A stretch of DNA of 64,000 nt from Heterodontus francisci (taxonomy: Eukaryota): assembly GCF_036365525.1 (NCBI RefSeq), contig NW_027142279.1:62001-126000 (forward strand), written 5' to 3'. The position numbers and the translations under genes are program-made. Below, in pieces: positions 12,169 to 43,261 of the stretch (its first letter is position 1; every line of letters starts with the position of its first letter). Under the pieces are notes generated by a model. It did no database searches and had not been told where the DNA came from. It saw only the letters and a program-made list of their open reading frames with translations.

Positions 12169-12750
12169 TCTACTGCTGCCCCCTGCCGGTGGAAGATGAG
12201 CACTGAGATTCAATCTACTGCTGCCCCCTGCCGGTGGAAGATGAGCACTGAGATTCAATCTACTGCTGCCCCCTGCCGGTGGAAGATGAGCACTGAGATT
12301 CAATCTACTGCTGCCCCCTGCCGGTGGAAGATGAGCACTGAGATTCAATCAACTGCTGCTCCCTGCCGGTGGAGGATGAGCACTGAGATTCAATCTGCTG
12401 CTGCCTCCTGCCGGTGGAAGTTGAGCACTGAGATTCAATCCACTGCTGCCCCCTGCAGGGGGAAGATGAGCACTGAGATTCAATCTACTGCTGCCCCCTG
12501 CCGGTGGAAGATGATAACTGAGATTCAATCTACTGCTGCCCCTCTGCCGTTGGAAGATGATAACTGAGATTCAATCTACTGCTGCCCCCTGCCGGTGGAA
12601 GATGATAACTGAGATTCAATCTACTGCTGCCCCCTGCCGGTGGAAGATGATAACTGAGATTCAATCTACTGCTGCCCCTCTGCCGTTGGAAGATGAGCAC
12701 TGAGATTCAATCTACTGCTGCCCCTCTGCCGTTGGAAGATGAGCACTGAA
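12169..12750. repeat. 45-bp minisatellite, ~13 copies, abutting the V3 RSS
   Basis: Unit tctactgctgccccctgccggtggaagatgagcactgagattcaa. Confidence 0.95.
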
Positions 12751-12769
12751 CTCCTGTTCATCCGCTGCA

Positions 12770-12808
12770 GGTTTTTGCAGCTGAGTATCCGCTTTCTCAA
12801 ACACTGTG
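12770..12808 (-). other. 23-RSS of V3 (CACAGTG-23-GCAAAAACC)
   Basis: Heptamer 12802-12808, nonamer 12770-12778. Confidence 0.95.
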
Positions 12809-13675
12809 CAATACTACAAGCGCAGAAATAGACAGCGGTGTGAGATGGAGCGGCGTCTCTCAGTGCCAAAGTAAACAGCGTATCGCTGGCTCTGACTGCC
12901 TTAAATGACTCGGACGTGTAATTGGTAACAGACCCTTCTGTAGCAGAATAGAACAGAGCTTCCAGTGCCCTGTCTGGTTGTTGTCTGTACCAGTACATAT
13001 AGGAATTGGCAGTATTGGTCAGCGTGCATCTCAGTGTTGTCGACTCTCCTGCTGCAATCGATAGGATCGAGGGTGACTGTTCCACATAGGAGGAGAGTAT
13101 TCCTGTGGAATGGAACATCGATTAGATTATTATTTCAGTCAATAGTGGATTGGAGCAGGGGCTGCATTGCAAGAAAGAAAGGGCTTACATTAATATAGCG
13201 CCGTTCAGGACCTCCGGACATCAGAAAGTGCTTTGCAACAAATGCAGTTACTCCATCAGTACTGCCTATTCGACAGTGCAGCAGTCCCTCAGTACTGCCT
13301 CTGCGACAGTGCAGCAGTCCCTCAGTACTGCCTCTGCGACAGTGCAGAACTCACTCTGTACTGCCTCTGCGACAGTGCAGCACTCCCTCAGTACTGCCTC
13401 TGTGACAGTGCAGCACTCCCTCAGTACTGCCTCTGTGAAAGTGCAGCACTCCCTCAGTACTGCCTCTGCGACAGTGCAGCACTCCCTCAGTCCTGACACG
13501 TGGTTTGTGAGCCTTGACTTTGAGCTCAAGTGTTCTGGAGTGAGACTCAGACACAGGAGTGTTCCGGACAGAATCACCCCTAACATTACAATACATTATT
13601 CGACTCTGTTTCTGACTTTGACTTACGTGGGAACAGGGCAGGCATCAAGATTAGACAGAGAACTTCGTGCAACAT
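12809..13675 (-). CDS. TRBV: TCR beta V segment V3 (family B, ends CACS; resembles mouse TRBV1): leader 13627-13675, V exon 12809-13102; open
   Basis: Leader MLHEVLCLILMPALFP; V exon SYVEQSPSILSIAAGESTTLRCTLTNTANSYMYWYRQQP...HTAVYFCACS. Confidence 0.9.
13250..13490. repeat. 33-bp tandem repeat in the V3 intron (paralogous copy 15530-15740; related array 30190-30370)
   Basis: Unit cagtactgcctctgcgacagtgcagcactccct. Confidence 0.9.
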
Positions 13676-15049
13676 GATTTCTTCATTCGATACTAACTCG
13701 ATGTGTGAACGTGTGGAGTTTTCAACAACACACTTGCAGGCGGTTTCTTTATTGTATCCAATCAAATACCCAGCATCCGGTTGTCATTGTGATTGGCAGT
13801 CACTTACTGTGACACTCTGCTCCACCCCATTACTTTACATAGCAATGTTGTAGAATGATACAACACAGGAGGATAGGGGGACATTGAATAGAGGTGTTCA
13901 CATTTCAGAAAGGGATTTGATAGAGTACAATTCAGGGAAGCAACCCTCTATACCCAGAGAGTGTGCCCATCCCTTATTGCCCCTGAGGAGGTGATGGTGA
14001 ACCATCTTCGGGAATACCTGCTGGGCCATATCAGAGGGCAGTTAACAGTCAACCTCATTGCTGTGGGTCTGCAGTCACATATAGGCCAGACCGGGTAAGA
14101 ATGGCAGATTTCCTTCCCTGAAGGTAATCAATGAAGACGTTGGGTTTTTAAGACACTCCATGTTCAGGATTACTCATACTTTCCATGACAAATTTTTATT
14201 TATTTAATTAATTGAATTTAAATTGCATTTCTGCCCCGGTGGGAATTGAACTCAAGTCTGGGGATCATTAGTCCAGGCCTCTGGATTACTAGCCCAGTAA
14301 CATAACTGCTCTGCTGCCGAACCTCCGTGGTGAATGGGAGTTAAATGGTTAAATTGTTCACTGGTCTGAACTGCTGGTTTCTTTGAAGAACAGATTAAAT
14401 GTGACTCGAGTCTGAGGTGAAAGTGGGTAAAGAGTTTTCAGCAGCTTCTGAACTCGCTGTCAGGAGGCAGGTGTCCCAGAGATGAAGTTATCTGGAGAGG
14501 GGTTTCGCCTTTGAACAGTGTGAAACAGCGCTCAGATGGTTCAGGGTTCTGAGCTGAGATAGTTTCTGTGCATTGGGGAGTTGTTCACCTCTGTGTAGTG
14601 AAGGTTAGAGGGAGATTAACAAGACTGGTACCAGGGATGAGGGACTTCAGTTACTGTGGAGAGACTGGAGAAGCTGGGGGTTTCTGCCCTCAGAGCAGAG
14701 AAGGTTAATGGCAGATGTGATACAGATATTGAAGATCATAGAGGATTTTGATAGATAATTGATGACTAACCACATCATCTACTGGTCAATATATAGAAAA
14801 TCTATGAAAAGATGGTCATTCATTACATTACTGCAGTCTGTTTAATTAGTTCTCACAAACTGTAATTACCTAACGATAGAGTTAGATAGATAGAGAGACA
14901 GAGATGGATAACCAGGTAAAGAGATAGATAGATAGAGAGACAGAGAGATGAACAATCAGGTGGACAGATAGATCTGAACAATCAGCTTCAATCTACTGCT
15001 GCCCCCTGCCAGTTGAAGATGAGCACTGAACTCCCGTTCATCCGCTGCA

Positions 15050-15088
15050 GGTTTTTGCAGCTGCGGATCCGCTTTCTCAAACACTGTG
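15050..15088 (-). other. 23-RSS of V4 (CACAGTG-23-GCAAAAACC)
   Basis: Heptamer 15082-15088, nonamer 15050-15058. Confidence 0.95.
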
Positions 15089-15922
15089 CGATACTACAAG
15101 CGCAGAAATAGACAGCGGTGTGAGATGGAGCGGCGTCTCTCAGTGCCAAAGTAAACAGTGTATTGCTGGCTCTGTCTGCCTTAAATGACTCGGATGTGTA
15201 ATTGGTGACAAACCCTGTTCCAGCAGAATAGAACAGAGCTTCCAGTGCCCTGTCCGGTTGTTACTGTACCAGTACATGAATGTATAGCCAGTATTCTTCA
15301 GCGTGCATCTGAGTGTTGTCGACTCTCCTGCGGAAATCGATAGGATGGAGGGTGACTGTTCCACATAGGAGGAGAGTATTCCTGTGGGGCGGAACATCGA
15401 TTAGATTATTATTTCAGTCAATAATGGATTGGAAGAGGGGCTGCATTGCAAGAAAGAGAGGGCTTACATTAATATATCGCCGTTCAGGACCTCAGGACAT
15501 CAGAAAGGGCTTTGCAACCAATGTAGTTACTCCCTCAGTACTGCCTCTGCGACAGTGCGGCACTCCCTCAGTACTGCCTCCGCAACAGTGCAGCACTCCC
15601 TCAGTACTGCCTCTGTGACAGTGCTGCACTCCCTCAGTACTGCCTCTGCGACAGTGCAGCACACCCTCAGTACTGCCTCTGCGACAGTGCAGCACACCCG
15701 CAGTACTGCCTCTGCGACAGTCCAGCACTCCCTCAGCCCTGACACCTGGGGTGTTAGTTTTGACTTTGAGCTCAAGTGTTCTGGAGTGAGACTCTGACAC
15801 AGCAGTGTTATGGAACAGAATCACCGCTGACATTACAATACATTATTCGACACAGTTTCTGACTTTGACTTACGTGGGAAGAGTGCAGCCATCAAGATTA
15901 GACAGAGAACCTCATGCAACAT
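15089..15922 (-). pseudogene. TRBV: TCR beta V pseudogene V4 (family B): leader 15874-15922, V exon 15089-15381 with 1-bp frameshift just after WY
   Basis: V3 TGG TAC AGA CAA CAA vs V4 TGG TAC AGT AAC AAC; exon 293 vs 294 nt; downstream frame still reads LFYSAGTGFV...AVYFCACS. Confidence 0.85.
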
Positions 15923-17505
15923 GATTTCTTCATTCGATACTAACTCGATGTGTGAACGTGTGAAGTTTTCAACAACGCACTTGCAGGCGGTTTCTATATT
16001 GTATCCAATTAAATACCCAGCATCCGGTTGTCATTGTGATTGGCAGTCACTTACTGTGACACTCTGCTGCACCCCATTACTTTACATAGCAATGTTGTAG
16101 AATGATACAACACAGGAGGATAGGGGGAGATTGAATAGAGGTGTTCACATTTCAGGAAGGGATTCGATAGAGTAGAATTCAGGGAAACAACCCTCTGTAC
16201 CTGGAGAGTGTGCCCATCCCTTATTGCCCTTGAGTTGGTGGTGGTGAACCATCTTCGGGAATGCCTGCAGGGCAGTTAATAGTCAACAACATTGCTGTTG
16301 GTCTGGAGGCACATATAGGCCAGACCGTGTAAGAACGGCATATTTCACTATGTTCACTATGGAGAAGGATGATGTAGGTGTAGATATCAGGGAGGGGGGT
16401 TGTGATATACTTGAACATATTAGCTTTTAAAGGGAGGAGTATTAGCTGTTTTAGCAGTCTTAAAAGTGGATAAGACCGCAGCCCGGATGAGACATATCCC
16501 AGGCTGTTATGTGAGGCAAGGGAGGAGATTTCAGGGCCTCTGACACAAATTTTCAATTCTCTCTGGCCACAGGAGTGGTCTCAGAGGACTGGAGGACAGC
16601 GAATGTTGTACCATTATTCAAGAAGGACACTTGTGCTCTTCTGAACTCGCTGTCAGGAGGCAGGTGTCCCAGAGATGAAGTTATCTGGAGAGGGATCTCG
16701 CCTTTCAACAGTGTGAAACAGCGCTCAGATGGTTAAGGGTTCCGAGCTGAGTTAGTTCCTGTTCATTGGGGGGTTGTTCGCCTCTGTGTAGTGAAGGTTA
16801 GAGGGAGATTAACAAGACTGGTACCAGGGATGAGGGAGCTCAATTACTGTGGAGAGACTGGAGAAGCTGGGGGTTTCTCTCCTGAGAGCAGAGAAGGTTA
16901 ATGGTAGATGTGATACAGATATTGAAGATGATAAAAGATTTTGATAGATAATTGATGACAAACCACATCATCTACTGGTCAATGTATAGAAAATCCCGGA
17001 AAAGATGGTCATTCATTATATTGGTGCAGCATGTTTAATTAGTTCATACAAAGTGTAATCACCCAAAGATAGAGTTGGATAGATAGAGAGACAGAGAGAT
17101 AGATCACCAGGGAGAGAGATAGATTGATATCGAGAGAGGTAGAGAAATAGAGAGTTGGAGGGAAAGTCAGACAGGTAGAGAAATAGCGAGCTGCATGGAG
17201 AGACAGTCACTGCTCCTGTAAAAGACAGGAATGTTAATTCGCATTCTACCATTTTACGCCAGCTTTGCAGCCAGTGGTAGAGTGGGGAATAGAGAGAGGG
17301 AGCGAGAGAGATGGAGAGAGTGGGATGGAGAGAGAGGGATGGAGACAGAGGGATGGTTAGAGAGGAATGGAGACAGAGGGATGGAGAGAGGGAGCGACAG
17401 AAAGTTATTGATAAGTCATGAACTCATTGAAGGGCGGAGTGTTTTCGAGGTGATGAATGTTCTCCTTGTGTTCCCAGGTCACTGTTAAAGTGTGTTCCAG
17501 ACTCT

Positions 17506-17652
17506 GATGGAGAGAGGAGGAGATCAGTAAACAGGGAACTTCTGGGAATGAAAGGGAGACAGGGAGAGTAAAGGAAAGTTATTAACGATAATCTTTGTAT
17601 TTCACACTCACTTACAATGAAACAGGATTATCAGAACCAGTAACTGATGCAT
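17506..17652 (-). pseudogene. Orphan V leader exon (17616-17652, MHQLLVLIILFH) plus intron; V exon and RSS absent
   Basis: Near-identical to V8 intron/leader 26230-26375; homology stops just before the splice acceptor. Confidence 0.8.
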
Positions 17653-18748
17653 CTTTCACATCGACCTGTTCCCTTAATAGACACAGGAGTGAGATCAGGA
17701 GCTTCGAGTCTTGTGAGGGTCCAAATTCACTCTTTACAAATCATTGGGAGCAACATGAAGAACGTCAGGAAGTGATACAATGTTGGAGACGCCCATTCCC
17801 CAGGTCAACAAATAACAATCGAATTCGTTGCCAATCTCCTTCTCTCTCTCCATATATATATATATATATATATATATACGTATATCTTTTTACCTTCAGC
17901 TCTTTTGCTCTCTCTTCCTGTGTCTGTCACCTCATGTGTCAAGGGTTCTGTCTTCCACTCTCTCCTACTCTCTCTCGCTATCTCAGTCTATTTTTACTCT
18001 CTTTCTCTCTCTGTCTTTCTCTCTCTCTCATCGTGTATCCAGGGTTCTGTCTCCCACTCTCTCCTTCTTTCTGACTCTCCCTTTCTCTTACTCTCGCTTT
18101 CTCTTTAGTTCTTTCCCTGTCTTTGTCTCTCTCTAGATCTATCTCCCTAGATGTCGCAGGCTCTTTGTCTCAGTCTCTCTTTCTCTCCTTCTCTCTCTCA
18201 GTGTCGCACTCTCTCTCTCTCTCTTGCTGTCTCGCTGTCTTTGCCTCGATTTCTGTCTCCCTCTCTATCTCAGTCTCTTTAACTCTATCTGTCGTTTTCT
18301 CTCTCTCTCACCAGATCTCTCTGTCACACACATACACGCTCTTTCTCTCTCTATCGAAGTAGGTGTCCTTGTCCTGTTGATGTGTATCAAGCTGGATCTA
18401 CATGGATCTCCTGCTCTTTCAGTTTTCTCACTGAATCCTTCTCAAAGCCATTGTCCGTTCCATGGTCCTGGATCCCCCTCTGCTGTCCCTGTGGAGAAGG
18501 TAAACACAGGGTCAGTGCATAAAAACCCAGATTATTGTCATTGATTCCTGATAGTTACATTCTGAGATCTCGTGACATCTTTATTAATCGTTCATTGCAC
18601 CCTCGGCAGTACCTGTAAATCTAGTGTGTCACTACAACCATAACTCAACTCTTTTTATTGTAACAAACACTTTCACTCTGCATAAGGGAACAGGAGGTCG
18701 AGGCACCGAACGATATTATCCTCCACAGGTGTTTCCTGCTGCCTTTGG

Positions 18749-18787
18749 GGTTTTTGTTGAACTGCTCCATCTCTCTGAGTCACTGTG
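18749..18787 (-). other. 23-RSS of V5 (consensus CACAGTG-23-ACAAAAACC)
   Basis: Heptamer 18781-18787, nonamer 18749-18757. Confidence 0.95.
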
Positions 18788-19309
18788 AAGACTCCAGGCA
18801 CAGACATACACGGCCGAGTGATTCTCCTACAGGCTGGAGGACTCCAGGTTGAACTTGGAGTTACTCGGTCTCTCGGCAGTGAAACTCTCCACCTAACGTT
18901 CTGAGTTCACCCTTTGTGCAGTTAGGGAGTAAAACATCAGCTGCGGCTCCTTCCCCGAGTATTGTCTGTACCAGTACATGTAAGGGTTGCTGGTACCATC
19001 CACGGTGCATTTCAGCTTCACCTGCTCCCCAGAAAAGTTGGCGACAGTGGCGGGAGTCTGGTTTATAGTCTGTGAGTTCACATCTCGGAAAGAGACAGGG
19101 AGAGGAGGAGATCAGTAAACAGACAACTTCAGTCCAGTGGGGAGAAAGAGGAGAGAGAGAGAAAATCAGTCCAGGAGGGAGAGAGAAAGAGAGAGAAGGA
19201 GAGAACGAAATAAATAAAAACATATCCTAAAGAAATGTTAAGCGGAATTATTGTTTCAATAAAATCCCTTACGGTGAAACAGGGTGATCAGAGTCTGTAA
19301 CAGATACAT
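18788..19309 (-). pseudogene. TRBV: TCR beta V pseudogene V5 (family C, TRBV30-like): leader 19273-19309, V exon 18788-19083
   Basis: VNSQTINQTPATV...KCTVDGTSNPYMYWYRQ; in-frame TAG at 18893-18895 and 18827-18829; 2-bp deletion before the second Cys. Confidence 0.88.
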
Positions 19310-19383
19310 CTTTTCCTTTAAGCTGCCCTCTGAATCTGCAAAGGGGAGAGAGCAGGAATGATGAGTGTTGTTAATAACCAACC

Positions 19384-19432
19384 CACTCTTTACAAATCAT
19401 TGGGAGGAACAGGGAGAGCATTAGGAAGTGAT
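19384..19432 (-). promoter_or_regulatory. Conserved family-C V promoter block (ACTTCCT ETS-like, CCAAT, TTTGTAAA); also at ~17728, 21530, 24435, 26451
   Basis: Same ~50-bp block ~75-125 bp upstream of each family-C leader ATG; function inferred from position. Confidence 0.5.
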
Positions 19433-19476
19433 CAACTCATCAACAAATGAGAATCGAGTTGGTTGCCAATGTCCCA

Positions 19477-19518
<42 letters not shown>

Positions 19519-20539
19519 GTCTCTTACCTGCGCTGTTTCTTTCTTTCGCTCTGTCTCTGTCTCTCATTCTCTACCTCCCTATAGGTTTCAGTCTCTTTAT
19601 CTCAGTCTCTCTCTCTCGCACACACACTAGGTCTCTCTCTCTCTCAGTCTCTCTCTTTGTCTCTCCCTCTATCTCTCTTTCTCTCTAAGGAGGTGGGTGT
19701 CCTTCTCCTGGTCATGTATATCAACCTGGAGGACTGTATGATCTCCCACTGTTTGAGTTATCCTATGAACTCCTTCTCAAAGCCATTGTGCATCACATGG
19801 TCCTCGAGCGTCCTCAGCTATCCCTGTGGTGAAAATATACACAGTGTCAGTCTATAACAGCCCCACTCCTTTCATTGTTATTCTTCCCTGACAGTTACTA
19901 TCCTGAGATCACGGATATTCTAATTCAATGAGCTGGAAGATGAATGGGCACGAATACAAAGCTGTGCGTGTGTGTGTGTGTTTTTCACTCGCTCTGTCTT
20001 TAGTTCACTGTCCCTCTCTGTTTTACTGCTCTTTGTCTTTCTGTCCCTCTCTCTTTCTTTGTGTGTGTGTGTGTGTGTGTGTGTGTCTGTCTGTCTGTCT
20101 GCCAATATGTCTCAGTCTCTTCATCTGTGTTTTCTTTTTTTTCTCTCAGTCTCTGTCGCTCGGTCTTTCTTGTTTTCTCTCTCAGTTCTCTGGATCTTTG
20201 TTCTCTCTTTCTATCGCTCTCGCTCTCTCTCAACCTTTCTTGGTCCCTTTCTCTGTCCTCCTCTCTGTCACCGTCTCTGTCTCCCTCTCTGTCCTCTTCT
20301 CTGTTTCAGTTTCTTGGTCTCATTCTCTCAGTATCATTCTCTCTTTCTCTCAGACTTTTTCTCTCAGTCTCTCTGTCTCAGTCTCTCTGTTCCCCTCTCT
20401 GTCTCAGTCTCTCTGTCTCAGTCTCTCTTTTTCAGTCTGTTGTCTCTGTCAGTTTTCCTCTAAATCTCGTTCTGACCCTCTCTCACACTCGGTCTCCCTC
20501 TCTTTGTCTCTCTCACTGTGTGTGTGTATCCCTCTCTAA

Positions 20540-20780
20540 GGTGATGAATGTCCTTCTCCTGTCCATGTGTATGAAGCTGGAGGGCTGGATGACCTCTGCC
20601 TCTTTCTGTTTTCCTATTAAATGTTTTGCAGGCCATTGTGTATTCATGGTCCTGGAGCACCCTCCGTTAACAATATAGAGGAAGAAAACTCAGTGTCAGT
20701 GCAGTAAAACTCAGTCGTTTTATAGTTAATTCTTCCTGATAGTTACAACCTCAGATCTGGTGTTATTCTTGTTAATTGTT
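20540..20780. repeat. ~250-bp local repeat between family-C V genes (copies near 18357, 19690, 20540, 23408, 24730, 25490, 26877)
   Basis: Recurring gtcctt(c/g)tcctg...atgtgtat(g/c)aagctgg...gtcagtgca...cctgatagttaca...agatc. Confidence 0.75.
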
Positions 20781-20934
20781 CTTTGCGCATTCTCCATTAC
20801 CTGTATATCTAATCTCTCACTACCACTCAAACCCATCTCTTCTTGTTATCATAAACACTTTCTCTCTGCAAAACGAAAGAAGTTCGAGGCTCCGAGCTGT
20901 TTTATCCTCCACAGGTGTTTCCTGCTGCCTTTGG

Positions 20935-20973
20935 TGTTGTTGTTGAACTTCTCCATCTCTCTGAGTCACTGTG
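20935..20973 (-). other. 23-RSS of V6 (CACAGTG-23-ACAACAACA, degenerate nonamer)
   Basis: Heptamer 20967-20973, nonamer 20935-20943. Confidence 0.85.
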
Positions 20974-21455
20974 AAGACTCCAGGCACAGAAATACACGGC
21001 CCAGTGATTCTCCCGGAGGCTGGAGGACTCCAGGTTGAAGTCGGAGTTGCTCGGTCTCTCGGCGGTGAAACCCTCCAACGCCTCCTCCGGATTTATGTGA
21101 TTAGTATCCGTGGAATAAAACATAAACTAGTCTCCTTCCCCGGGTATTGTCTGTACCAGAACATCTCAGGGTTACTGCTGCCCTGCACAGTGCATTTCAG
21201 CTTCACCTTCTCCCCAGAATATTTGGAGACAGCGGCGGGAGTCTGGTGGATAGTCTGTGAGTTCACATCTGGGAAAGAGACAGGGAGAGGAGGAGATCAA
21301 TAAACAGGAACATTCAGTCAGTGGGGGAGAGAGAAAGAGAGAAAGAGAGAGAGAAATAAATAAAAACATAACCTCCAGAAATGTGAAGTAGAATTATTGT
21401 TTCAATGAAGTCCCTTACGGTGAATCAGAGTGATCAGAGTCAGTAACAGATACAT
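20974..21455 (-). pseudogene. TRBV: TCR beta V pseudogene V6 (family C): leader 21419-21455, V exon 20974-21268, 1-bp deletion in FR2
   Basis: VNSQTIHQTPAAVSKYSGEKVKLKCTVQGSSNPEMFWYRQYPGKE, then frameshift (GAG ACTAG TTT ATG); 3' frame MFYSTDTNH...AVYFCAWS. Confidence 0.85.
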
Positions 21456-21625
21456 CTTTTACTTTAAATTGCCCTCTGAATCAGCAAAGGGGAGGGAGCA
21501 GGAGTGATTAGTGTTGTCAACAACCAACCCACTCTTTACAAATCATTGGGAGGAACAGGGAGAGCGTTAGGAAGTGATGCAGAGATGGTGACATTCATTT
21601 CCCACATCAACAAATGAGAATCGAG

Positions 21626-21789
21626 NNNNNNNNNNNNNNNNNNNNNNNNNNNNNNNNNNNNNNNNNNNNNNNNNNNNNNNNNNNNNNNNNNNNNNNNNNN
21701 NNNNNNNNNNNNNNNNNNNNNNNNNNNNNNNNNNNNNNNNNNNNNNNNNNNNNNNNNNNNNNNNNNNNNNNNNNNNNNNNNNNNNNNNN
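21626..21789. other. Assembly gap (N run)
   Basis: Run of N. Confidence 1.
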
Positions 21790-22452
21790 CAATCTCTCTC
21801 TCTCAATCTCTTTGTGTCAACCTCTCTGTCTCTGACTCTTTGTTTCAGTCTCTCTCTTTCTCAGTCTCTCTGTCTCAGTCTCTTTGTCTCAGTCTCTCTC
21901 TCAGTCTCTCTCTCTCTCTCATTATCTCTCTCTCAGTCTCCCTCTCACAGACTCTCCCTCTCTCAGACTCTCTGTCTCAGTCTCTTTGTCTGAGTCTCTC
22001 TGTCTCAGAGTCTCTGTCTCAGTCTCTCTCTCATAGTCTCTCTCTCACAGTCTCTTTGACTCAGTCTTTTTGTCTCAGTCTCCCTCTCTCTCTCTCAGTA
22101 TCTCTCTCTCAGTCTCTTTGTCTCAGTCTCTCTCTCTCAGTCTCTCTCTCTCTCTCTCAAGTCTCTCTCTCAGTCTCTCTCTCAGTCTCTCTCTCACAGT
22201 CTCTTCGTCTCAATCTCTCTGTCTCAATCTCTTTGTGTCAGCCTCTCCATCTCTGACTCTTTGTCTCAGTCTCTCTCTCACTCAGTCTCTCTGACTCAGT
22301 CTCTCTCTTTCAGTCTCCCTCTCTCCTTTTCTCAGAGTCTCTGTCTCAGTCTCTCTCTTTCAGTCTCCCATTCTCCTTCTCTCAGACTCTCTGTCTCAGT
22401 CTCTTTGTCCCAGGCTCTCTTGCACAGTTTCTTTTTCTCAGTCTCTTTGTCT

Positions 22453-22487
<35 letters not shown>

Positions 22488-23196
22488 CTCTCTCTCAGTC
22501 TCTCTCTCACAGTCTCTTCGTCTCAATCTCTCTGTCTCAATCTCTTTGTGTCAGCCTCTCCATCTCTGACTCTTTGTCTCAGTCTCTCTCTCTCTCAGCC
22601 TCTCTGTCTCAGTCTCTCTCTTTCAGTCTCCCTCTCTCCTTTTCTCAGAGTCTCTGTCTCAGTCTCTCTCTTTCAGTCTCCCATTCTCCTTCTCTCAGAC
22701 TCTCTGTCTCAGTCTCTTTGTCCCAGGCTCTCTTGCACAGTTTCTTTTTCTCAGTCTCTTTGTCTCAGTCTCTCTCTCTCAGTATCTCTCTCTCAGTCTC
22801 TTTGTCTCATTCTCTTTGTCATGCTCTTTGTCTCAGTCTCTCTCTCTCTCAGCCTCTCTCTCTCAGTCTCTCTCTCTCTCAGTCTCTCTCTCTCAGTCTC
22901 TCTGTCTCAGTCTCTCTCTGTCTCAGTCTCTCTCTCTCAGTCTCTCTGTCTCAGTCTCTCTCTGTCTCAGTCTCAGTCTCTCTCTCTCTCAGCCTCTCTC
23001 TCTCTCAGTCTCTTTGTGTCAGTCTCTCACTCTCAGTCTCTCTCTCTCTCTGTCTCTCTCTGTCTCTCAGTCAGACTCTCACTCCCTATCTCTCAGTCTC
23101 TCTCGCTCTCAGTCTCTCTCTCTCGGTCTCTCTGTTTCAGTCTCTCTCTGTCTCAGTCTCTCACTCTCAGTCTCTCTCTCTGTCTCTCTGTCTCAG

Positions 23197-23229
<33 letters not shown>

Positions 23230-23400
23230 GTCAGACACTCTCTCCCTCTCAGTCTCTATCTCTCAGTCTCTCTCACTCTCAGTCTCTCTGTCTCAGTCTC
23301 TTTATCTCTGTCAGTTTTCCTCTCAATCTCGTTCTCACCCTCTCTCTCACACTCGCTCTCTCTCTATCTTTGTCTCTCCCGCTATCTGTGTGTATATCCG
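21790..23400. repeat. CT/ctcagt-rich simple repeat tract
   Basis: (CT)n interspersed with ctcagt; source of the Leu/Ser ORFs. Confidence 0.95.
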
Positions 23401-23840
23401 TCTCTAAGGTGATGAATGTCTTTCTCCTGTCCACGTGGATGAAGCTCGACCACTGTATGATCTCTGCCTCTTTCTGTTTTCCTATTAAATGCTTTCTCGT
23501 CCATTGTGTATTCATGGTCCTAGAGCACCCTCTGTTAACCCTATAGAGGAGGAAAACTCAATGTCAGTGCAGAAAAACTCAAGTCGTTTTATTGTTAATC
23601 TTTCCTGATCGTTACAACCTCAGATCTGGTGTTATCCTTGTTAATCATTCAGAGAGAGATAGAAAGTTTTACCGCACAGGTGAGTCCGTTCATTGTCACT
23701 TCGTCAGTGCCTGTACATTTATTATCTCACTTTTATTCTCATTTGTCTTCTTATCGTCACAAACACAATCGCCCTGCACAAAAAAAAAGCGGGAACACCG
23801 TGCAATTTTATCTCCCAGAGGTGTTTCCTGCTGCCTTTGG

Positions 23841-23879
23841 GGTTTTTGTTGAACTGCTCCATCTCTCTGAGTCACTGTG
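23841..23879 (-). other. 23-RSS of V7 (consensus CACAGTG-23-ACAAAAACC)
   Basis: Heptamer 23873-23879, nonamer 23841-23849. Confidence 0.95.
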
Positions 23880-24360
23880 AAGAATCCAGGCACAGAAATA
23901 CACGGCCGAGTGATCCTCCCGCAGGCTGGAGGTCTCCAGGTTGAACTCGGAGTTACTCGGTCTCTCGGTGGTGAAACCATCCCCCGCCTCCTCTGGAGAT
24001 ACGATATTGGCACCCGTGGAGTAAAACATAAACTGCGGTTCCTTCCCCGGGTATTGTCAGTACCAGAACATGTTAGGGTTACTGGTGCTGCTGCCCAGCA
24101 CGGTGCATTTCAGCTTCACCTGCTCCCCAGGAATTTTGGAGACAGTGGTGGGAGTCTGGCGGATAGTCTGTGAGTTCACATCTGGGAAAGAGACAGGGAG
24201 AGGAGGAGATCAGTAAACAGGAACATTCAGTCCAGTGGGGAGAGAGAAAGAGAGAGATAAATAAATAAAAGCATAACCAAAAGAAATGTTAAGTGGACTT
24301 ATTGTTTCAATAAAATCCCTTACGGTGAAACAGGGTGATCAGAGTCAGTAACAGATACAT
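23880..24360 (-). pseudogene. TRBV: TCR beta V pseudogene V7 (family C): leader 24324-24360, V exon 23880-24181, single nonsense codon
   Basis: ...KCTVLGSSTSNPNMFWY*QYPGKEPQFMFY...DHSAVYFCAWI; TGA at 24057-24059 is the only lesion. Confidence 0.87.
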
Positions 24361-25094
24361 CTTTTACTTTAAGCTGCCCTCTGAATCAGCAAAGGGGAGA
24401 AAGCAGGATTCATGAGTGTTGTCAATAACCAACCCACTCTTTACAAATCATTGGGAGGAACAGGGAGAGCATTAGGAAGTGATGCAGAGATGGTGACACT
24501 TATTTTCAAGATCAACAAATGAGAATCGAGTTGGTTGTCAATGTTCCACTTTCTCTCTCTCTCTCTCCCTTTCTCTAACTTGTGCTGTGTTTTTCTCTCT
24601 GTCTCTGTCTCTCATTCTCTGCCTCCCTGTATGTCTCAGTCTCTTTATCTCGATCTCTCTCTCACAGATACAAACACACAAGGTCCCTTTCTCTCTTTGT
24701 CTCTCTCGCTGTGTGTCTCTCTCTCGAAGGAGGTGGGTGTCCTTCTCCTGGTCATGCATATCAACCTGGAGGACTGTATGATCTCTCACTGTTTCAGTTT
24801 TCCTATGAACTCCTTCTCAATGCCATTGTGCATCACATGGTCCTCGAGCGTCCTCAGCTGTCCCTGTGGTGAACATATACACAGTGTCAGTCTATAACAG
24901 CCCCAGTCCTTTTATTGTTATTCTTTCCTGACAGTTACTATCCTGAGATCACGGGATATTCTGATTCAATGAGCTGCAAGATGAATGGGCACGGATACAA
25001 AGCTGTGCATGTGTGTGTGTGTGTTTTTCACTCGCTCTGTCTTTAGTTCACTGTCCCTGTCTGTTTTACTGCTCTCTGTCTTTCTGTCCCTCTC

Positions 25095-25161
<67 letters not shown>

Positions 25162-25884
25162 TTCTCCCAATCTGTCTCAGTCTCTTGATCCATGTTTCCT
25201 TTTTTTTCTCTCACTCGGTCTCTCGGTCTTTCTTGTTTTCTCTGTCGCTCTCTCGACCTTTCTTGATCCTCGTCTCCCTCCTCCTCTCTGCCACCCTCTC
25301 TGACCTCCTCTATGTCACCCTCTGTCCTCCTTTCTGTCCTCCTCTCTGTCCTCTTCTCTCTTTCCTCTCTCTGTCTCTGTCTCTCTGTCTCTGTCAGTTT
25401 TCCTCTCAATCTTGTTCTCTCCCTCTCTCACACATTCGGTCTCCCTCTCTTTGTCTCTCTCACTGTGTGTGTGTATATCCCTCTCTAATGTGATGAATGT
25501 CCTTCTCCTGTCCATGTGTATGAAGCCTGAGGGTTGTATGACCTCTGCCTCTTTCTGTTTTCCTATTAAATGTTTTACAGACCATTGCATATTCATGGTC
25601 CGAGAGCACCCTCTGTTAATCATATAGAGGAAGAAAACTCAGTGTCAGTGCAGTAAAACTCAAGTCGTTTTATAGTTAATTCTTCCTGATAGTTACAACC
25701 TCAGATCTGGTGTTATCCTTGTTAATTGTTCTTTACACATTCTCCACTATCTGTATATCTAATCTCTCACTCCCACTCTAACCCATCTCTTCGTGTTATC
25801 ATAAACACTTTCGCTCTGCAAAACGAAACAAGTTCGAGGCTCCGAGCAGTTTTATCCTCCACAGATTCTTCCTGCTGCCTTTGG

Positions 25885-25923
25885 TGTTGTTGTTGAACTG
25901 CTCCATCTCTCTGAGTCACTGTG
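25885..25923 (-). other. 23-RSS of V8 (CACAGTG-23-ACAACAACA, degenerate nonamer)
   Basis: Heptamer 25917-25923, nonamer 25885-25893. Confidence 0.85.
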
Positions 25924-26375
25924 ATCTCTCCAGGCACAGAAATACACGACCGAGTGATTCTCCCACAGGCTGGAGGACTCCTGGTTGAACTCGGAATTCC
26001 TCTGTCTCCCGGCGGTGAAACCATCCACCGTCCCCTCTGGATCCACATGGTTAGCAGTATTGGAATAAAACATCAACAGCGGCTCCTTCCCCAGGTATTG
26101 TCTGTACCAGCACATTCTATCAGTACTGGTGCCCTGCACGGTGCACCTCAGTTCCACTGCTTCTCCACGCAATCTGGAGACAGCGGCACGAATCTGGTGG
26201 ATTGTCTGTGAGTTCACATCTGGGAGAGAGATGGAGAGAGGAGGAGATCATTAAATAGGGAACTTCTTGGAATGAAAGGGAGATAGAGAGAGGAAAGGAA
26301 AGTTATTAACGATATATTTGTATTTCACACTCACTTACAATGAAACAGGATTATCAGACCCAGTAACTGATACAT
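25924..26375 (-). CDS. TRBV: TCR beta V segment V8 (family C, TRBV30-like): leader 26339-26375, V exon 25924-26219; open reading frame
   Basis: Leader MYQLLGLIILFH; VNSQTIHQIRAAVSRLRGEAVELRCTVQGTSTDRMCWYRQ...VVYFCAWR. Some atypical residues (QTP to QIR, FNL to FNQ). Confidence 0.8.
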
Positions 26376-31510: not shown

Positions 31511-31673
31511 NNNNNNNNNNNNNNNNNNNNNNNNNNNNNNNNNNNNNNNNNNNNNNNNNNNNNNNNNNNNNNNNNNNNNNNNNNNNNNNNNNNNNNNNNN
31601 NNNNNNNNNNNNNNNNNNNNNNNNNNNNNNNNNNNNNNNNNNNNNNNNNNNNNNNNNNNNNNNNNNNNNNNNN
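31511..31673. other. Assembly gap (N run)
   Basis: Run of N. Confidence 1.
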
Positions 31674-31865
31674 CTCTCTATCTATCTCTCTCTCCGTCTC
31701 TCTCACTTGCTCTCTATCTATCGCTCTCTATCTTTGTCACCCTCTCTCTCTCTCGCTCTGTCTCTCTCACACTGACTGGGTCTTCGATTGGAAATTCTGT
31801 CCCATTGATGACCACCTCCCTTTGTTCCCTCATTCAGGATTTGGAGTGGGCAGGAAGATCCCACG

Positions 31866-33972
31866 ATGCGGACTCTCTGCTTGTTCCTGTTGGTGCTGTT
31901 CTGGGTCCCCGAGTCAGATGCGGTTGCACTAAATGACAATGTCTTGGCTGGAATTGTCTCACAGTAAGTGTTCATCCTGCCCAGGCCTTTCACCATTCAC
32001 TGACAGGGTTAGGCTGTGAGAATGGCCCAGGTATGAGGCTCCGCTCTGTCAAAGTGATGAGGGGGAGCAGGGCAGAGTCCAGTTAAATTAAAATAACATG
32101 GAACCACAGAGAGGGGAAGGTGAGCAAGAAAGGACTCAGAGTGAGACATGTCACTTCATCAGTAATCTGACTCACTGACCCCACTCACTGACCCCACTTA
32201 CTGACCCCACTCACTGACCCCACTCACTGACCCCTCTCACTGAACCCACTCACTGACCGCACTCACTGACCCCGCTCACTGACCCCACTTACTGACCCCA
32301 CTCACTGACCCCTCTCACTGACCCCACTGACTGACCCCACTGACTGACCCCAATCACTGACCCCTCTCATTGACCCCTCTCACTGACCCCACTCACTGAC
32401 CACACTCACTGACCCCTCTCACTGACCCCACTCACTGTCCCCACGCACTGACCCCTCTCACTGACCCCACTAACTGACCCCACTCACTGACCCCGCTCAC
32501 TGACCTCGCTCACTGACCTCGCTCCTCTCCCCTCCCGCTCTCTCTCCCTGTTGCCCTGTGTCTATCTCTTTCTCTCTCTATGTCTTCCATTCTATTTATC
32601 TCTTGGTTTGTGTTGCTGTTAATCTCTCACTGTATTTCTCCTGTCACTTGTCCCTCTCCATGCTCGACGGCCTGTCTATCTCTCTCATCTCTGTCTCTAT
32701 TACTTTATCCTTTTTCAGTTTATCACTGCCTCTGTTCCCTCTCTCTGTCTCTATCTGTATCTGTCTCCATCTTGTTCTTCCTTTTTCTGTCTCTATCTGT
32801 TTCTATGTACTTGTCTCCAGAACTCTTCCTTTCCCTGGCTTTGTTTCTTCTCTCCATCTCTGTCTCTCCTGCTGTCTTCTACCCTCCCTCTATCACATTC
32901 TCTGTCTCCCTCCCTCCATCCATCTCTCCACCTCTTTGTTTCTCCCTTGCTCTTGTTCCAATCACTCTTTCCATCTCTGTTTCATTGGAATGAGTTCATT
33001 CGGTCCCGTCCTTTCCAATGTCGTAAATTAATGACCAAATTTATTGAAATGCCACAGCATACAAGACTACGGGCCAAGTGCTGGGAAATAGGATTAGAAT
33101 AGTTAGGTGCTTGATGGCTGGCACAGACACGATGGGCCGAAGGGCCTGTTTCTGTGCTGTGTAACTCTTTGACTCTCTGACTCAAACTCCCAGTTTCCCT
33201 CCTTCCATCATGAGGTATGGTATTAAATAGGCAGGTGACCATAATCCACATCATACTGACCTGGCACAAGGAGAATTTCATTCACAATTCCTACCTTGAC
33301 TCTCACTTTGTGTTTGTCCCTTTCAGATTCCGACAAGTGTCTGGCCACCAGCCCAGCAGTACGACTGGGGGAGGACAGTTCGCCTTCCTGATGGTGTTAA
33401 CTCCTCAACAATGCACCGGTGCCAATATCAATCAGAATGTACAATTCAGACCCTCTGATTCAGGAAGACCGGTTATTCGTGGCGGTGTGAATTACTTCCT
33501 GAACAGTCGATCAGTAAACTACATCGCAGTTTACCCCAACACAGGAAGTCGCTGCTCAGAGAATAAACTGTTACACTTCACTCAGGAGGATCAACGCTAT
33601 GGGCAGACTGACAGTGCAGCTCGGCTGCTTCAGAATAGCATCAATAACCAGGGGCTGCAGGTTGGCTGTGTCATTCTCTACACCACCTACACCCCCTGCA
33701 TCCAGAGCTGCTTCAGTGGCAATGAGAATTGTGACATCCTCGCCGCGTTAGGCCAGGCACCCTTTAGCCACCCATGGGCTGGCCCGCAGGTTCAGAAGTA
33801 TTTTGTCTTCAGTACATTGTACCGATACGACAATAATAGAAATAAGATCCCCACAGTTCGAAACAAGCTGGGACAAGTTACCCAGGCAGGCTTTCACATC
33901 AGAAAGTGTGATGGGACCAACAGCCAAATACAGTGTCAGGACTGCACCCACCCTGGGGGCTACTGTATCTAG
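31866..33972 (+). CDS. SNAD1: Secreted AID/APOBEC-like deaminase (SNAD family), ~247 aa; coding exons 31866-31963 and 33327-33972
   Basis: Signal exon MRTLCLFLLVLFWVPESDA-VALNDNVLAGIVS splices in phase 2 (CA|gtaagt...tttcag|A) to FRQVSG...QFAFL...QQC...NYIAVYP...RCSENKLL...CVILYTTYTPCIQSC...FVFSTLYRYD...IRKC...CQDC...C*. This matches the SNAD motif order. Subfamily number not verified. Confidence 0.82.
32175..32520. repeat. 13-bp minisatellite in the SNAD intron
   Basis: (cactgaccccact)n. Confidence 0.95.
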
Positions 33973-38142: not shown

Positions 38143-38181
38143 TGTTTTTGTCTCACTCTGCTGCAGGGTTGTATCGCTGTG
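38143..38181 (-). other. 23-RSS of V9 (CACAGCG-23-ACAAAAACA)
   Basis: Heptamer 38175-38181, nonamer 38143-38151. Confidence 0.9.
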
Positions 38182-38807
38182 CCCAATCTTGCTGCACAGT
38201 AGTAGGTCGCAGTGTCTGTCGGCTGGGGGTCGCCCAGCTGCAGGGAGAATCGGTTGCTTGCAGAGTCATGTTGCACAGTGAACCGCTTCTCAAAGCCTGG
38301 CCCACAGCTGCCGTGCTCATTGCACATCCACTCTACTGCCTTCCCCTCCTGCCTGTACCAGTGCATGGTGTAGCTGCCCATGCTGGCTCCCTCCAAGCTG
38401 CAGCCGAGGGCGAGGGGCTTCCCCGGTCGAATAGAAGCCGCGGCTGGAGTCTGGACCACAGTGGGTGCAGACTGAACCCCTGGAACACATTCCATAAAAG
38501 AAAGTAATTCAGAATCATGGAAGGAAAATGGTAGCATAAATCATAAAATCTAACAGAATAGAAAGAGGCCGTTCTGCCCATCGTATCTGCGCTGGCTGTT
38601 TGAAAGAGCAATCGAGTTAGTCGCACTTGCCCCTGCTCCTACCCCATTGCCCTCCCAATTTCCCCGCTCCAAGCACTGATCCAATAGCCATTTGGGAGAT
38701 TACTATTGAATCTACTTCCTCCTGCTGAAGGGATAGCACTTACAAAAAATCCAATGTCCAAGCAATAAGATGACCAAGATTGAGATGTTTTTAGCTGAGA
38801 CTGCCAT
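38182..38807 (-). CDS. Antigen-receptor V segment V9, TCR-delta-like: leader 38744-38807, V exon 38182-38479; open
   Basis: Leader MAVSAKNISILVILLLGHWIF|WVQS; VVQTPAAASIRPGKPLALGCSLEGASMGSYTMHWYRQEGKAVEWM...GPGFEKRF...DSASNRFSLQL...DTATYYCAAR. Confidence 0.85.
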
Positions 38808-41443: not shown

Positions 41444-41482
41444 AGTTTTTGCCGTGTTTCCTTGCATTCTAGTTGCACTGTG
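41444..41482 (-). other. 23-RSS of V10 (CACAGTG-23-GCAAAAACT)
   Basis: Heptamer 41476-41482, nonamer 41444-41452. Confidence 0.9.
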
Positions 41483-41764
41483 TGTATCCTAGTGAGCCCC
41501 GCAGTAGTAAGTGCTGTTGTCTTGGAGCCAGGAGCTTTTCAAGGACAGAGGGAAAGTGTTGGCCTGAGTCTCGTGCTGGGTTTCAATCCTTTTCCTGTAG
41601 TTCGATGCAGAAAGTACACTCTATCTGATCCATTCCAGGCAGTCACCAATCTGCAATTACCAGTCCAAACAACACTCAGTCATGTTGCCCTGCCCAATGC
41701 TTCTGTGGAACGTGGGTTCCTCCACGGGAACCAGAGCATTGACCACTGGGGACTGGAGAACCAT
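41483..41764 (-). pseudogene. Decayed V pseudogene V10, related to V9
   Basis: Single frame MVLQSPVV...GNMTECCLDW*LQIGDCLEWIR*...RKRIETQHETQANTFPLSLKSSWLQDNSTYYCGAH*; three stops; first Ig Cys lost. Confidence 0.78.
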
Positions 41765-43261
41765 CTAACATCTAACAAGATTCTTCACACAGTATGGCAG
41801 ATCAATGGGGAGAGAACGACAGTGGGCCACAGGGAGGGACAGAGGCAAAAGCAGAAGAGAGGGAATAAGAAGGAGACAAATTATTCTTCTAGAGTCACGC
41901 TGCTACATTCACACTTATATTTGCTCCACAGGTTAAGCCCAATTATAAATCAGATTTATTACATTGATAAAACTATAAATGCACCAAACTCGGAAGGATG
42001 AATACAAACCAATTCAGTCTGCATCTGAGAAAAAAGAAAATTGGTAATGTTTAATGATGATACTCTGTCAGAATAATCCGAACTGCTGTTCACATCAAGG
42101 AACAGTAAATTATTTCAATTTGGTTGACGAGGAGATTATGTATAGCAATGCATAAAGTAACTATTACGAACATTAATGTCATCAACAATGGGACCAAATG
42201 GGGACAGTGGCGTTTCCTGTCTTAAAACTGGAAAGCAGGAATATGGAAAGCAGATCTCAAAATACTTTGAGATTCTTTTCAGAGGTGGAGGCTCGTTATA
42301 AGCAGTGTGATCAAACCGCCCCTGCTGCTGTGGAAACTGCAGATAGGTCAAATAACCAGTGTCACTGGCGTTGTATTCCTTGCAGAGCACCCTCTGACCA
42401 CATCATACCAACAAAACCTTAGAGGGGAACAGAGCCGGACAGGCAGAGGCCATCCCGGGGAACCCCACATAGGGAGAAATAAAGAGAGAATGAGAGAGAG
42501 AGAACAACTGGGAGGGAGCAAGGGAGAGGTAGACTGAGGCAAAGACAGAGAGAGAGAGACTGACTGATCAACAAAGCCACTGAGAGATGGAATGATTCAG
42601 GGAAAATTAGTTCGAAAGAGAGAGAGAGAGAGAGATTGAGAGAACGAGTGACAGATAGAGAGAATGAGGCAATAGGAGGTGTAGAGACAGACAGGGAGAG
42701 ACAGAGACAGAGCGAAACAGAGACAGGAAATGAGAGGAGATAGGCAGAATTAATTAGAGACAGAGAGACAGAATGAGACTGAGTGCGTGTGAGAGAGAAA
42801 TAGAGACAGACAGCAAGAGAAAGCGTGGAAATGAGAGGCGAGAAAGAGAGGGGAAGGAAAGAAGAGAGTGAGATAAAGAGGGAGAATGAGAATGGGTGTG
42901 TGTGTGAGAGACAGAAAGAGCAACAGAGCTGAGAGGAAATGAGAGAAGGAAAGAGAGACAGGGATAAAGAAAGAGAATGAGAGTGAGTGTGTGTGAGAGA
43001 GGAAAGATAACAAGAGCAACAGAGACAGAGAAACAGGCATGAAGAGAGAGAGAAAGGAAACAATTTTACAGAACAATGTAAACGATGTTTTTTATAATCA
43101 ATATTGGTGAAGTCTGATGTGTTTCCTGGTCCTAGCTCGCCATCTGCTGTCCCCCTGGAGGAGAAAACACCCCAAAAATACAAAAACAACTGCAGCAGAA
43201 AAAAACACTAACAATTTCAACAATAACTTCAACAGTAAAAATAAAAGCACCAATGAAAAGG

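What the first reader, a model, noticed from the sequence alone, without database searches (positions are those of the whole stretch)
31866..33972. Secreted AID/APOBEC-like deaminase (SNAD) embedded inside a TCR V-segment cluster
Seen: an intact two-exon gene with a signal peptide and the SNAD motif series, antisense to and lying between V8 (26.4 kb) and V9/V10 (38-42 kb). The signal exon at 31866 is absent from the ORF track. Known: SNADs are a secreted, poorly characterised branch of the AID/APOBEC superfamily, and sharks hypermutate TCR genes. Inference: the gene sits within the recombining interval, so deletional joining of V9 to D/J at lower coordinates would excise it, and it may share T-lineage regulation. 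I do not know of a described deaminase gene inside a TCR locus. Secretion argues against a direct role in hypermutation.
Basis: partly seen in the sequence, partly recalled or inferred. Interest (0 to 1): 0.9.

Follow-up and report, generated by a model that had tools for sequence, protein, structure and literature searches.

The report
Shark SNAD1 deaminase gene among TCR V segments
An intact, spliced and transcribed horn-shark gene for a secreted AID/APOBEC-like deaminase (SNAD1 family) lies on the opposite strand between T-cell-receptor V segments; family and shark membership are known, so only the address is new.

Summary
The window is Heterodontus francisci. Exon 31866-31963 and exon 33327-33972 (+) encode a 247-aa protein identical to an NCBI-predicted "uncharacterized protein". 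The large exon matches Pfam SNAD1 above its cut-off. An AlphaFold model (pLDDT 86) finds AID/APOBEC3 structures first. Public RNA-type contigs carry the exact GT..AG junction 31963>33327. They also show a further, unplaced 5' non-coding exon, so the gene has at least three exons.

Eight V-beta-like segments with 23-bp RSSs lie at 4.7-26.2 kb on the minus strand. On the other side are two VH-like V segments: V9 intact at 38.1-38.8 kb, V10 a pseudogene at 41.5 kb. So the far flank is not V-beta.

SNAD1 proteins are already known from nurse-shark plasma. Secreted-protein genes inside TRB loci have a precedent in the trypsinogens. The most likely reading is an ordinary plasma-type SNAD1 paralogue carried as a passenger in a duplicating V array. 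Nothing ties it to T-cell function.

The scan found the same arrangement on other pieces of this genome; I did not check those notes. The assembly gap 193 bp upstream of the start codon and synteny in other sharks could not be tested.

The parts
31838..31865 (+). 5' untranslated part of the signal-peptide exon. It follows a pyrimidine tract and the acceptor AG at 31836-31837. An upstream non-coding exon exists but was not placed.
   Evidence: the X1 contig aligns from 31835 with 26 unplaced letters before it. The paralogue contig of X3 aligns from 31838 with 36 unplaced letters. Depth is 0 over 31700-31780. Sequence.
31866..31963 (+). Coding part of the signal-peptide exon: M1 to the first two bases of codon 33. 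Hydrophobic core at residues 3-14; likely cleavage after S-D-A19.
   Evidence: 100% to P0001 residues 1-33; mean Kyte-Doolittle about 3.0 over residues 3-12.
31964..33326 (+). Intron of 1363 nt, GT..AG. It holds a roughly 10-nt tandem repeat (32160-32520), CT-rich simple sequence and a dispersed repeat (about 33045-33180).
   Evidence: joint 31963>33327 'skips 1363, GT..AG' in X1, X2 and X4.
33327..33972 (+). Last coding exon (third base of codon 33 to the stop). It holds the whole SNAD1 deaminase domain.
   Evidence: Pfam SNAD1; 100% identity to P0001; deaminase fold.
33553..33711 (+). Predicted zinc and catalytic site: C109-S-E111 ... P156-C157-x3-C161.
   Evidence: E111 is invariant; C109, P156, C157 and C161 are at least 90% conserved in 21 relatives. 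Coordinates computed from the exon frame.
33907..33966 (+). SNAD1/2-type four-cysteine cluster: C227, C236-x2-C239, C246.
   Evidence: One search places C227 in strand 222-228 and C236-C239 on strand 235-238, as described for SNAD1 in PMC5889660.
33973..34100 (+). 3' UTR, at least to 34100. The contig runs 24 letters further, into a 32-bp tandem repeat, so the true 3' end is not defined.
   Evidence: table 8, record 1.
31511..31673 (.). Assembly gap (163 N) inside CT-rich simple sequence, 193 bp upstream of the ATG. It was neither filled nor bridged.
4696..26217 (-). Array of eight V-beta-like segments with 23-bp RSSs. Heptamers at 4734, 9342, 12808, 15088, 18787, 20973, 23879 and 25923. V1, V2, V3 and V8 have open V exons. 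V4-V7 carry frameshifts or stops.
   Evidence: Best single-domain PDB matches are TCR beta chains. Pfam V-set for V8.
38143..38807 (-). V9: intact VH-like V segment. Leader 38807-38744, V exon 38479-38182, RSS CACAGCG-23-ACAAAAACA.
   Evidence: best PDB matches are all antibody VH or nanobody domains. V-set, E 1e-10.
41444..41800 (-). V10: VH-like V pseudogene (in-frame stops) with an RSS CACAGTG-23-GCAAAAACT.

Best explanation
This is a working gene for a SNAD1-family protein, a secreted member of the AID/APOBEC-like zinc-deaminase fold. It is one of at least three horn-shark paralogues.

Shown: the gene is intact, it is spliced exactly as modelled, and it is transcribed. One of three runs from the same sample has far more exon depth than the other two. 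The product has an N-terminal signal peptide, a conserved C-x-E ... P-C-x3-C zinc and catalytic motif, the four-cysteine cluster of SNAD1, and a confidently predicted fold closest to APOBEC3/AID.

Inferred: the protein enters the ER, its signal peptide is cleaved after Ala19, and it is released into plasma, as its nurse-shark and carp relatives are. There or in endocytic compartments it deaminates cytosine in single-stranded nucleic acid of pathogens. This is the published hypothesis for the family, and no enzymatic proof exists.

Its place, antisense in a 12-kb V-free interval between the last V-beta-like segment and two VH-like V segments, is most likely that of a passenger. The gene would have been copied along with V segments by block duplication, as the trypsinogen genes were in tetrapod TRB loci. 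The paralogues appear to be partly homogenised by gene conversion. Deletional joining of a distal V would remove it from that chromosome in that T cell, with no expected consequence.
For: Gene model and identity. Splicing and transcription. The X1 contig covers both exons with 0 mismatches. The GT..AG joint is in X1, X2 and X4. X2 exon word depth is 1.5-4x10^5 against 19 in X1. X3 carries a paralogue contig matching P0002's substitutions. Fold: model pLDDT 85.8, pTM 0.86. All top Foldseek hits are APOBEC3/AID with probability 0.9-0.99. VIA-align gives Z 7.2-7.7 over about 140 residues. Motifs. Secretion of relatives: two SNAD1 proteins were found in nurse-shark plasma by LC-MS/MS (PMC9207270). 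Carp SNAD1 is found in blood and seminal plasma and is highest in liver (PMC11004436). Paralogues P0002 (86%) and P0003 (72%) are in the same species. In the P0001/P0002 mosaic, only 5 of 41 differences fall in residues 34-171, and 0 of 300 permutations reach this. Precedent for passenger genes in TRB: PMC12698447. Unchecked scan notes report SNAD genes in V arrays on other pieces and 489 kb further along this piece.
Against: No deaminase activity has been shown for any SNAD. The first zinc ligand is Cys, not the His of classical AID/APOBECs. The profile of this family finds no solved APOBEC by sequence, and the structural Z-scores are middling. The tissues of the RNA runs are hidden, so liver expression is inferred from other species. 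Recurrence of SNAD genes in V arrays on several scaffolds could mean more than chance hitch-hiking. The 'passenger' reading is a default, not a tested result.
Confidence: 0.75

Rival explanations
1. The position is functional. The SNAD gene would share the chromatin or enhancer control of the TCR locus, be expressed in the T lineage, or have its dosage altered by V(D)J deletion. It would then contribute to T-cell biology or to diversification of receptor genes.
For: It lies between V segments with same-orientation 23-RSSs. Unchecked scan notes report other SNAD copies in V arrays of the same genome. Sharks are known to hypermutate TCR genes (general knowledge).
Against: It has a signal peptide and a disulfide cluster and no nuclear features. 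Relatives are plasma and liver proteins (PMC9207270, PMC11004436). Zebrafish and carp SNAD1 genes are scattered over other chromosomes with no TCR link reported (PMC11004436). Trypsinogens show that unrelated genes can live inside TRB loci (PMC12698447). The gene is on the opposite strand with its own splice structure.
Confidence: 0.07
2. Assembly artefact: the scaffold is mis-joined at the N gap (31511-31673), so the SNAD gene is not physically next to the V-beta array.
For: A 163-N gap sits in simple CT-rich sequence 193 bp upstream of the ATG. The 5' non-coding exon was not found in the 135 bp between the gap and the coding exon.
Against: Even with a break at the gap, the gene would stay 4.2 kb from V9 and 7.5 kb from V10, with no gap between. 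The identical protein is recorded on two contigs. Scan notes describe the same arrangement on another piece (unchecked).
Confidence: 0.08
3. It is secreted but not an enzyme: a pseudo-deaminase that only binds nucleic acid or another ligand, with the Cys-for-His change reflecting loss or change of catalysis.
For: C-S-E stands in place of H-x-E. No SNAD has a demonstrated activity (PMC11004436, PMC5889660).
Against: The catalytic Glu is invariant and all three predicted zinc ligands are at least 90% conserved across 21 relatives, including an amphibian and a bowfin. Cys-x-Glu is the normal first motif of cytidine and dCMP deaminases (established knowledge). Such conservation argues for retained zinc chemistry.
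Confidence: 0.15

Closest known systems
[quoted passage not shown] 2018, PMC5889660), including the nurse-shark plasma SNAD1 proteins (PMC9207270) and carp SNAD1/Cap31 (PMC11004436)
   Same: [quoted passage not shown] It shares a gene of 2-3 exons and lineage-specific paralogues with rapidly varying loops.
   Different: The first zinc ligand is Cys (C-S-E), where the carp paper describes H-x-E. This Cys form is shared by the shark, Pleurodeles and Amia relatives seen here. The gene lies among TCR V segments, which is not reported for any SNAD.
Classical AID/APOBEC deaminases (AID, APOBEC3A/B/G/H)
   Same: They are the closest solved folds (Foldseek probability 0.9-0.99; Z 7.2-7.7 over about 140 residues). 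Both have a zinc motif of the [HC]-x-E ... P-C-x(2-4)-C type.
   Different: There is no detectable sequence similarity to solved APOBECs. The shark protein is secreted and disulfide-rich, and its C-terminal helices are replaced by strands. AID and APOBECs are intracellular.
Trypsinogen (PRSS) gene cluster embedded in tetrapod TRB loci
   Same: It is a multi-copy family of secreted-protein genes, unrelated to T-cell function, lying between TRB V segments and therefore inside the recombining interval.
   Different: It is a different protein family. The trypsinogen-TRB linkage is conserved from amphibians to mammals, whereas conservation of SNAD-TRBV linkage is unknown.

Membership tests
SNAD1 (PF18744) | Match to the family profile above its curated threshold | tested here: met
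   E 2.2e-15, 57.6 bits against a cut-off of 25, profile positions 14-200 of 213. SNAD2 scores only 14.5 bits, below its cut-off.
SNAD1 (PF18744) | N-terminal signal peptide (predicted secretion) | tested here: met
   M-R, then a hydrophobic core at residues 3-14 (mean hydropathy about 3), then S-D-A at -3 to -1. Judged by rule, as no dedicated predictor was available. Actual secretion was not tested.
SNAD1 (PF18744) | Zinc and catalytic motif [H/C]-x-E ... P-C-x-x-x-C | tested here: met
   C109-S-E111 and P156-C157-I-Q-S-C161. E111 is invariant and the ligands are at least 90% conserved. Cys replaces the His reported for teleost SNAD1 (PMC11004436).
SNAD1 (PF18744) | Four-cysteine cluster: end of strand 5, CxxC in strand 6, Cys in strand 7 | tested here: met
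   C227 in strand 222-228, C236-x2-C239 on strand 235-238, and C246 near the C-terminus. No strand was called by DSSP at C246.
SNAD1 (PF18744) | [quoted passage not shown] | tested here: met
   (a predicted model, not an experiment): short helices at 59-63, 67-70 and 88-91 lie between strands 52-57 and 98-101. After strand 222-228 there is only a strand, 235-238.
SNAD1 (PF18744) | Cytidine deaminase activity on nucleic acid | not testable with these tools
   This needs recombinant protein. It has not been demonstrated for any SNAD according to PMC11004436.
AID/APOBEC-like deaminase fold | Five-stranded sheet with the catalytic helices of the cytidine-deaminase fold | tested here: met
   all listed hits are APOBEC3/AID. 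Z 7.2-7.7, rmsd about 4.2 A, 125-147 aligned residues; RibD deaminase domains score similarly. The Z is middling, so the fold call rests on the consistency of the hits together with the Pfam match.
TCR beta V array (context) | V-set exons ending in a conserved Cys, followed by heptamer, 23-bp spacer and nonamer, all in one orientation; V-beta-like sequence | tested here: met
   for V1-V8. No D, J or C element lies in the window, and word-based database searches with V8 and V9 were blank. Assignment to TRB therefore rests on PDB similarity and unchecked scan notes.
TCR beta V array (context) | The segments distal to the SNAD gene are also V-beta | tested here: not met
   V9 matches antibody VH and nanobody domains best. 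V10 resembles V9 and is a pseudogene.

The most novel reading that the evidence does not exclude
SNAD1 genes are an integral, co-amplified component of the elasmobranch TRB region, with several copies among V arrays across more than 0.5 Mb. They would be under locus-level control, so that an AID/APOBEC-like deaminase family is physically and regulatorily coupled to an antigen-receptor locus in the oldest jawed vertebrates. This could be a relic of an ancestral deaminase and receptor gene neighbourhood.
Probability: 0.06. Interest if true: 0.75.

Novelty: new member of a known kind. Interest (0 to 1): 0.35.

Why it matters
SNADs are the least understood branch of the AID/APOBEC superfamily: no substrate, activity or structure is known. 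This horn-shark paralogue is a clean candidate for expression and assay, being intact, strongly transcribed in one run and confidently modelled. The Cys-x-Glu site, conserved from sharks to a salamander and a bowfin, shows that the family's zinc site differs from that of classical APOBECs. The address among TCR V segments has not been described in the literature searched. Its most likely value is as a marker of how the shark TRB region grew by block duplication and gene conversion, as the trypsinogens are for tetrapods. It is unlikely to be a clue to TCR hypermutation.

Tried and rejected
The genomic context of the paralogues P0002 and P0003 and of the orthologues in Stegostoma, Scyliorhinus, Mustelus and others could not be fetched, so synteny is untested.
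2. Word-based protein searches with the V8 and V9 exons found nothing.
3. phmmer of the large exon and hmmsearch of the 21-sequence profile against PDB sequences gave no deaminase. They gave only chance hits to E1 enzymes, a pilin and ribosomal protein L3. The link to AID/APOBEC therefore rests on fold and on Pfam.
4. Rfam found nothing in the window.
5. A search for the missing 5' exon using the N-terminal extensions of P0002 and P0005 gave only low-complexity chance matches.
6. Pfam on other large ORFs of the window gave only a reverse-transcriptase fragment.
8. I never joined the two exons. They were searched separately by reference, and full-length work used the database protein P0001, which equals their translations.
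9. The idea that C-x-E is a shark-specific oddity was rejected. It is the majority state among the relatives recovered.

Full report
**What is there**

The stretch holds a start codon at 31866 followed by 98 coding bases. It ends at a consensus donor (CA|GTAAGT, last exon base 31963). A pyrimidine tract and TTTCAG acceptor precede 33327, from which the frame runs open to a stop ending at 33972. The split codon is CA+A (Gln), and the two parts add up to 247 codons. The first part is a 33-aa ORF, which explains its absence from an ORF track.

The large exon retrieved a 247-aa protein of Heterodontus francisci, P0001, named only "uncharacterized protein". It is 100% identical over the whole exon. 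Its first 33 residues are 100% identical to the translation of 31866-31964. P0001 was used for all full-length work.

**Is it transcribed and spliced as modelled?**

Four public runs hold parts of 31700-34100. Laid on the stretch, a 953-nt contig of run X1 covers 31835-31963 and then 33327-34100 without a single mismatch or gap. The joint 31963>33327 (GT..AG, 1363 skipped) also stands in three contigs of X2 and one of X4, which comes from a second study and organism label.

- The runs are only guessed to be RNA. However, exon-only coverage, empty intron bins apart from dispersed repeats, and intron-less contigs are what RNA gives.
- Summed word depth over the exons is 1.5-4x10^5 in X2, against 19 in X1. 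X2 and X1 are runs of one sample. Depth from contigs is a poor measure, but a difference of four orders suggests strong tissue-restricted expression. The tissues are not disclosed.
- X3 carries a 957-nt contig with 59 differences whose positions fit the substitutions of paralogue P0002, so that paralogue is transcribed too.
- Both contigs carry 26-36 letters that do not lie on the stretch, just before an AG at 31836-31837. The gene therefore has a further non-coding 5' exon, which I could not place.
- The gene has at least three exons, not two. Its promoter lies at or beyond the assembly gap at 31511-31673.

**What the protein is**

- The large exon matches Pfam SNAD1 (PF18744) at E 2.2e-15 and 57.6 bits, against a curated cut-off of 25, over nearly the whole profile. 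SNAD2 is below threshold.
- An exhaustive HMMER search found only 20 relatives at E<=0.001 among 1.8 billion representatives. Named ones come from Pristiophorus, Stegostoma, Mustelus, Heptranchias, Scyliorhinus, Callorhinchus, Pleurodeles and Amia.
- In a 21-sequence alignment, E111 is invariant. C109, P156, C157 and C161 are at least 90% conserved, as are C227, C236, C239 and C246.
- This gives a zinc and catalytic motif C-S-E ... P-C-x3-C, plus the four-cysteine cluster that Krishnan et al. (PMC5889660) describe for SNAD1/2.
- The Cys in place of the classical His is the majority state among these relatives, including the salamander and the bowfin. It is not a peculiarity of this gene. The carp study describes H-x-E and a "CVxxC" context for teleost SNAD1 (PMC11004436).
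- An AlphaFold2 model built on the alignment is confident (mean pLDDT 85.8, pTM 0.86). [quoted passage not shown]
- Foldseek against the PDB lists only APOBEC3 and AID entries at the top (probability 0.9-0.99, E about 1e-3).
- VIA-align gives Z 7.2-7.7 over 125-147 residues at about 4.2 A for APOBEC3A/B/G/H and AID, and similar values for RibD deaminase domains. These Z values are middling on their own. Together with the Pfam match and the motif they settle the fold.
- Sequence and profile searches of the PDB find no deaminase.
- The N-terminus has a charged start, a hydrophobic core (residues 3-14) and S-D-A before the likely cleavage site. There is no retention signal at the C-terminus.
- Secretion is supported for relatives. 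Two SNAD1 proteins were identified by mass spectrometry in nurse-shark plasma (PMC9207270). Carp SNAD1 occurs in blood and seminal plasma and is expressed most in liver (PMC11004436).

**The surroundings**

A scan for heptamer-spacer-nonamer signals and translation of the upstream DNA finds ten V segments, all on the minus strand, each followed by a 23-bp-spacer RSS.

- Eight segments lie at 4.7-26.2 kb. V1, V2, V3 and V8 have open V exons. V4-V7 carry frameshifts or stops.
- Their best single-domain matches among solved structures are TCR beta chains. V8 scores as V-set.
- The two segments beyond the SNAD gene are different. V9 (38143-38807; leader, intron, V exon, CACAGCG-23-ACAAAAACA) is intact, but it matches antibody VH and nanobody domains best. 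V10 (heptamer at 41482) resembles V9 and has in-frame stops.
- No V-like sequence lies beyond 42 kb, and there is no second SNAD copy in the window.

So the gene sits antisense in a 12-kb V-free interval between the last V-beta-like segment and two VH-like segments. It is "between V segments", but at a change of V type rather than in the middle of a uniform array.

Two N gaps exist, at 21626-21789 and 31511-31673. The second lies 193 bp upstream of the ATG. A break there would still leave the gene 4.2 kb from V9 without a gap.

**Paralogues**

The horn shark has at least two further SNAD1 proteins, P0002 (86% identical) and P0003 (72%).

- P0001 and P0002 are mosaic. Of 41 differences, only 5 fall in residues 34-171, and residues 94-171 are identical. 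The flanks are 62-68% identical, and 0 of 300 permutations reach this contrast.
- The same central stretch is not especially conserved against other species. That argues for gene conversion rather than constraint.
- The low-difference tract begins at the start of the last exon.
- Krishnan et al. noted similar mosaics among paralogous deaminases (PMC5889660).

Notes of this scan, which I did not verify, report SNAD genes antisense in TCR V arrays on other pieces of this genome. These include one of the same 2107-letter length and one followed up with the same verdict as mine. They also report another SNAD 489 kb beyond this window, and a second TCR-beta-like sublocus 14 kb beyond it.

**Interpretation**

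The safest reading is a functional SNAD1 paralogue whose product is a secreted, probably liver-made plasma protein with zinc-deaminase chemistry. Its substrate is unknown. The published proposal is single-stranded nucleic acid of pathogens outside the cell or in vesicles.

Its address is best explained by hitch-hiking in a region that grows by block duplication. The standard precedent is the trypsinogen cluster inside the TRB locus of humans, axolotl and newt (PMC12698447). These are also genes for secreted proteins with no T-cell role, lying in the interval that V-to-DJ joining deletes.

It has no evident consequence for a gene expressed elsewhere.

Nothing supports T-lineage co-regulation, and secretion argues against a part in TCR hypermutation. 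Teleost SNAD1 genes are scattered over chromosomes with no reported TCR link. No paper in the held library connects SNAD1 with a TCR locus. The address is therefore new, but the kind of arrangement is not.

**What remains open**

- The tissue of expression.
- Continuity across the gap.
- The 5' exon and promoter.
- Whether SNAD-TRBV linkage is shared by other cartilaginous fishes.
- Any enzymatic activity.

Noticed in passing
window 38143-38807 (-) and 41444-41800 (-): Two VH-like V segments with 23-bp RSSs lie distal to a V-beta-like array, in the same orientation. V9 is intact with leader, intron and V exon. V10 is a pseudogene. No D, J or C element lies nearby, so they are not part of a shark IgH mini-cluster. 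They may be TCR-associated Ig-like V segments.
   Followed up: partly
P0001 vs P0002 (window 33327-33742 on the P0001 side): The paralogues are mosaic. Residues 34-171 are nearly identical (5 differences; residues 94-171 identical), while both flanks are only 62-68% identical, and 0 of 300 permutations reach this. This suggests a gene-conversion tract starting in or before the last exon.
   Followed up: partly
window 33553-33561: The first zinc ligand is Cys (C-S-E), not His. This is the majority state in the 21 relatives aligned, including Pleurodeles waltl and Amia ocellicauda proteins, so it is a family trait rather than a defect.
   Followed up: yes
window 31835-31838 and upstream: The transcript contigs carry 26-36 letters upstream of an acceptor at 31836-31837 that do not lie within 31700-31834. 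An unplaced 5' non-coding exon must exist, at or beyond the N gap. The frame between the acceptor and the ATG is open, which may explain the N-terminally extended predictions P0002 and P0005.
   Followed up: partly
window 33045-33180 (intron): A dispersed repeat is present at enormous summed depth (2-3x10^5) in all four runs, on both strands and with many different flanks. It looks like a transcribed SINE-like element of elasmobranch genomes.
   Followed up: no
window 15088-24179 (-): V4, V5, V6 and V7 carry frameshifts or in-frame stops but keep good RSSs. V5 and V7 have a perfect nonamer ACAAAAACC. So half of the local V-beta-like array is pseudogenes.
   Followed up: partly
window 53370-59880 (-): A long tandem array has units that read as an open frame on the minus strand (ORFs up to 360 aa of a repeating roughly 23-residue motif rich in S, P, H, T, L). 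No Pfam match was sought for it. It is probably a minisatellite rather than a gene.
   Followed up: no
window 12090-12570, 13150-13680, 15430-15830, 30100-30590, 36430-36990: Several other minisatellites with open reading frames on both strands flank the V segments. One lies directly downstream of the V3 RSS; another scan note calls it CTCF-like.
   Followed up: no
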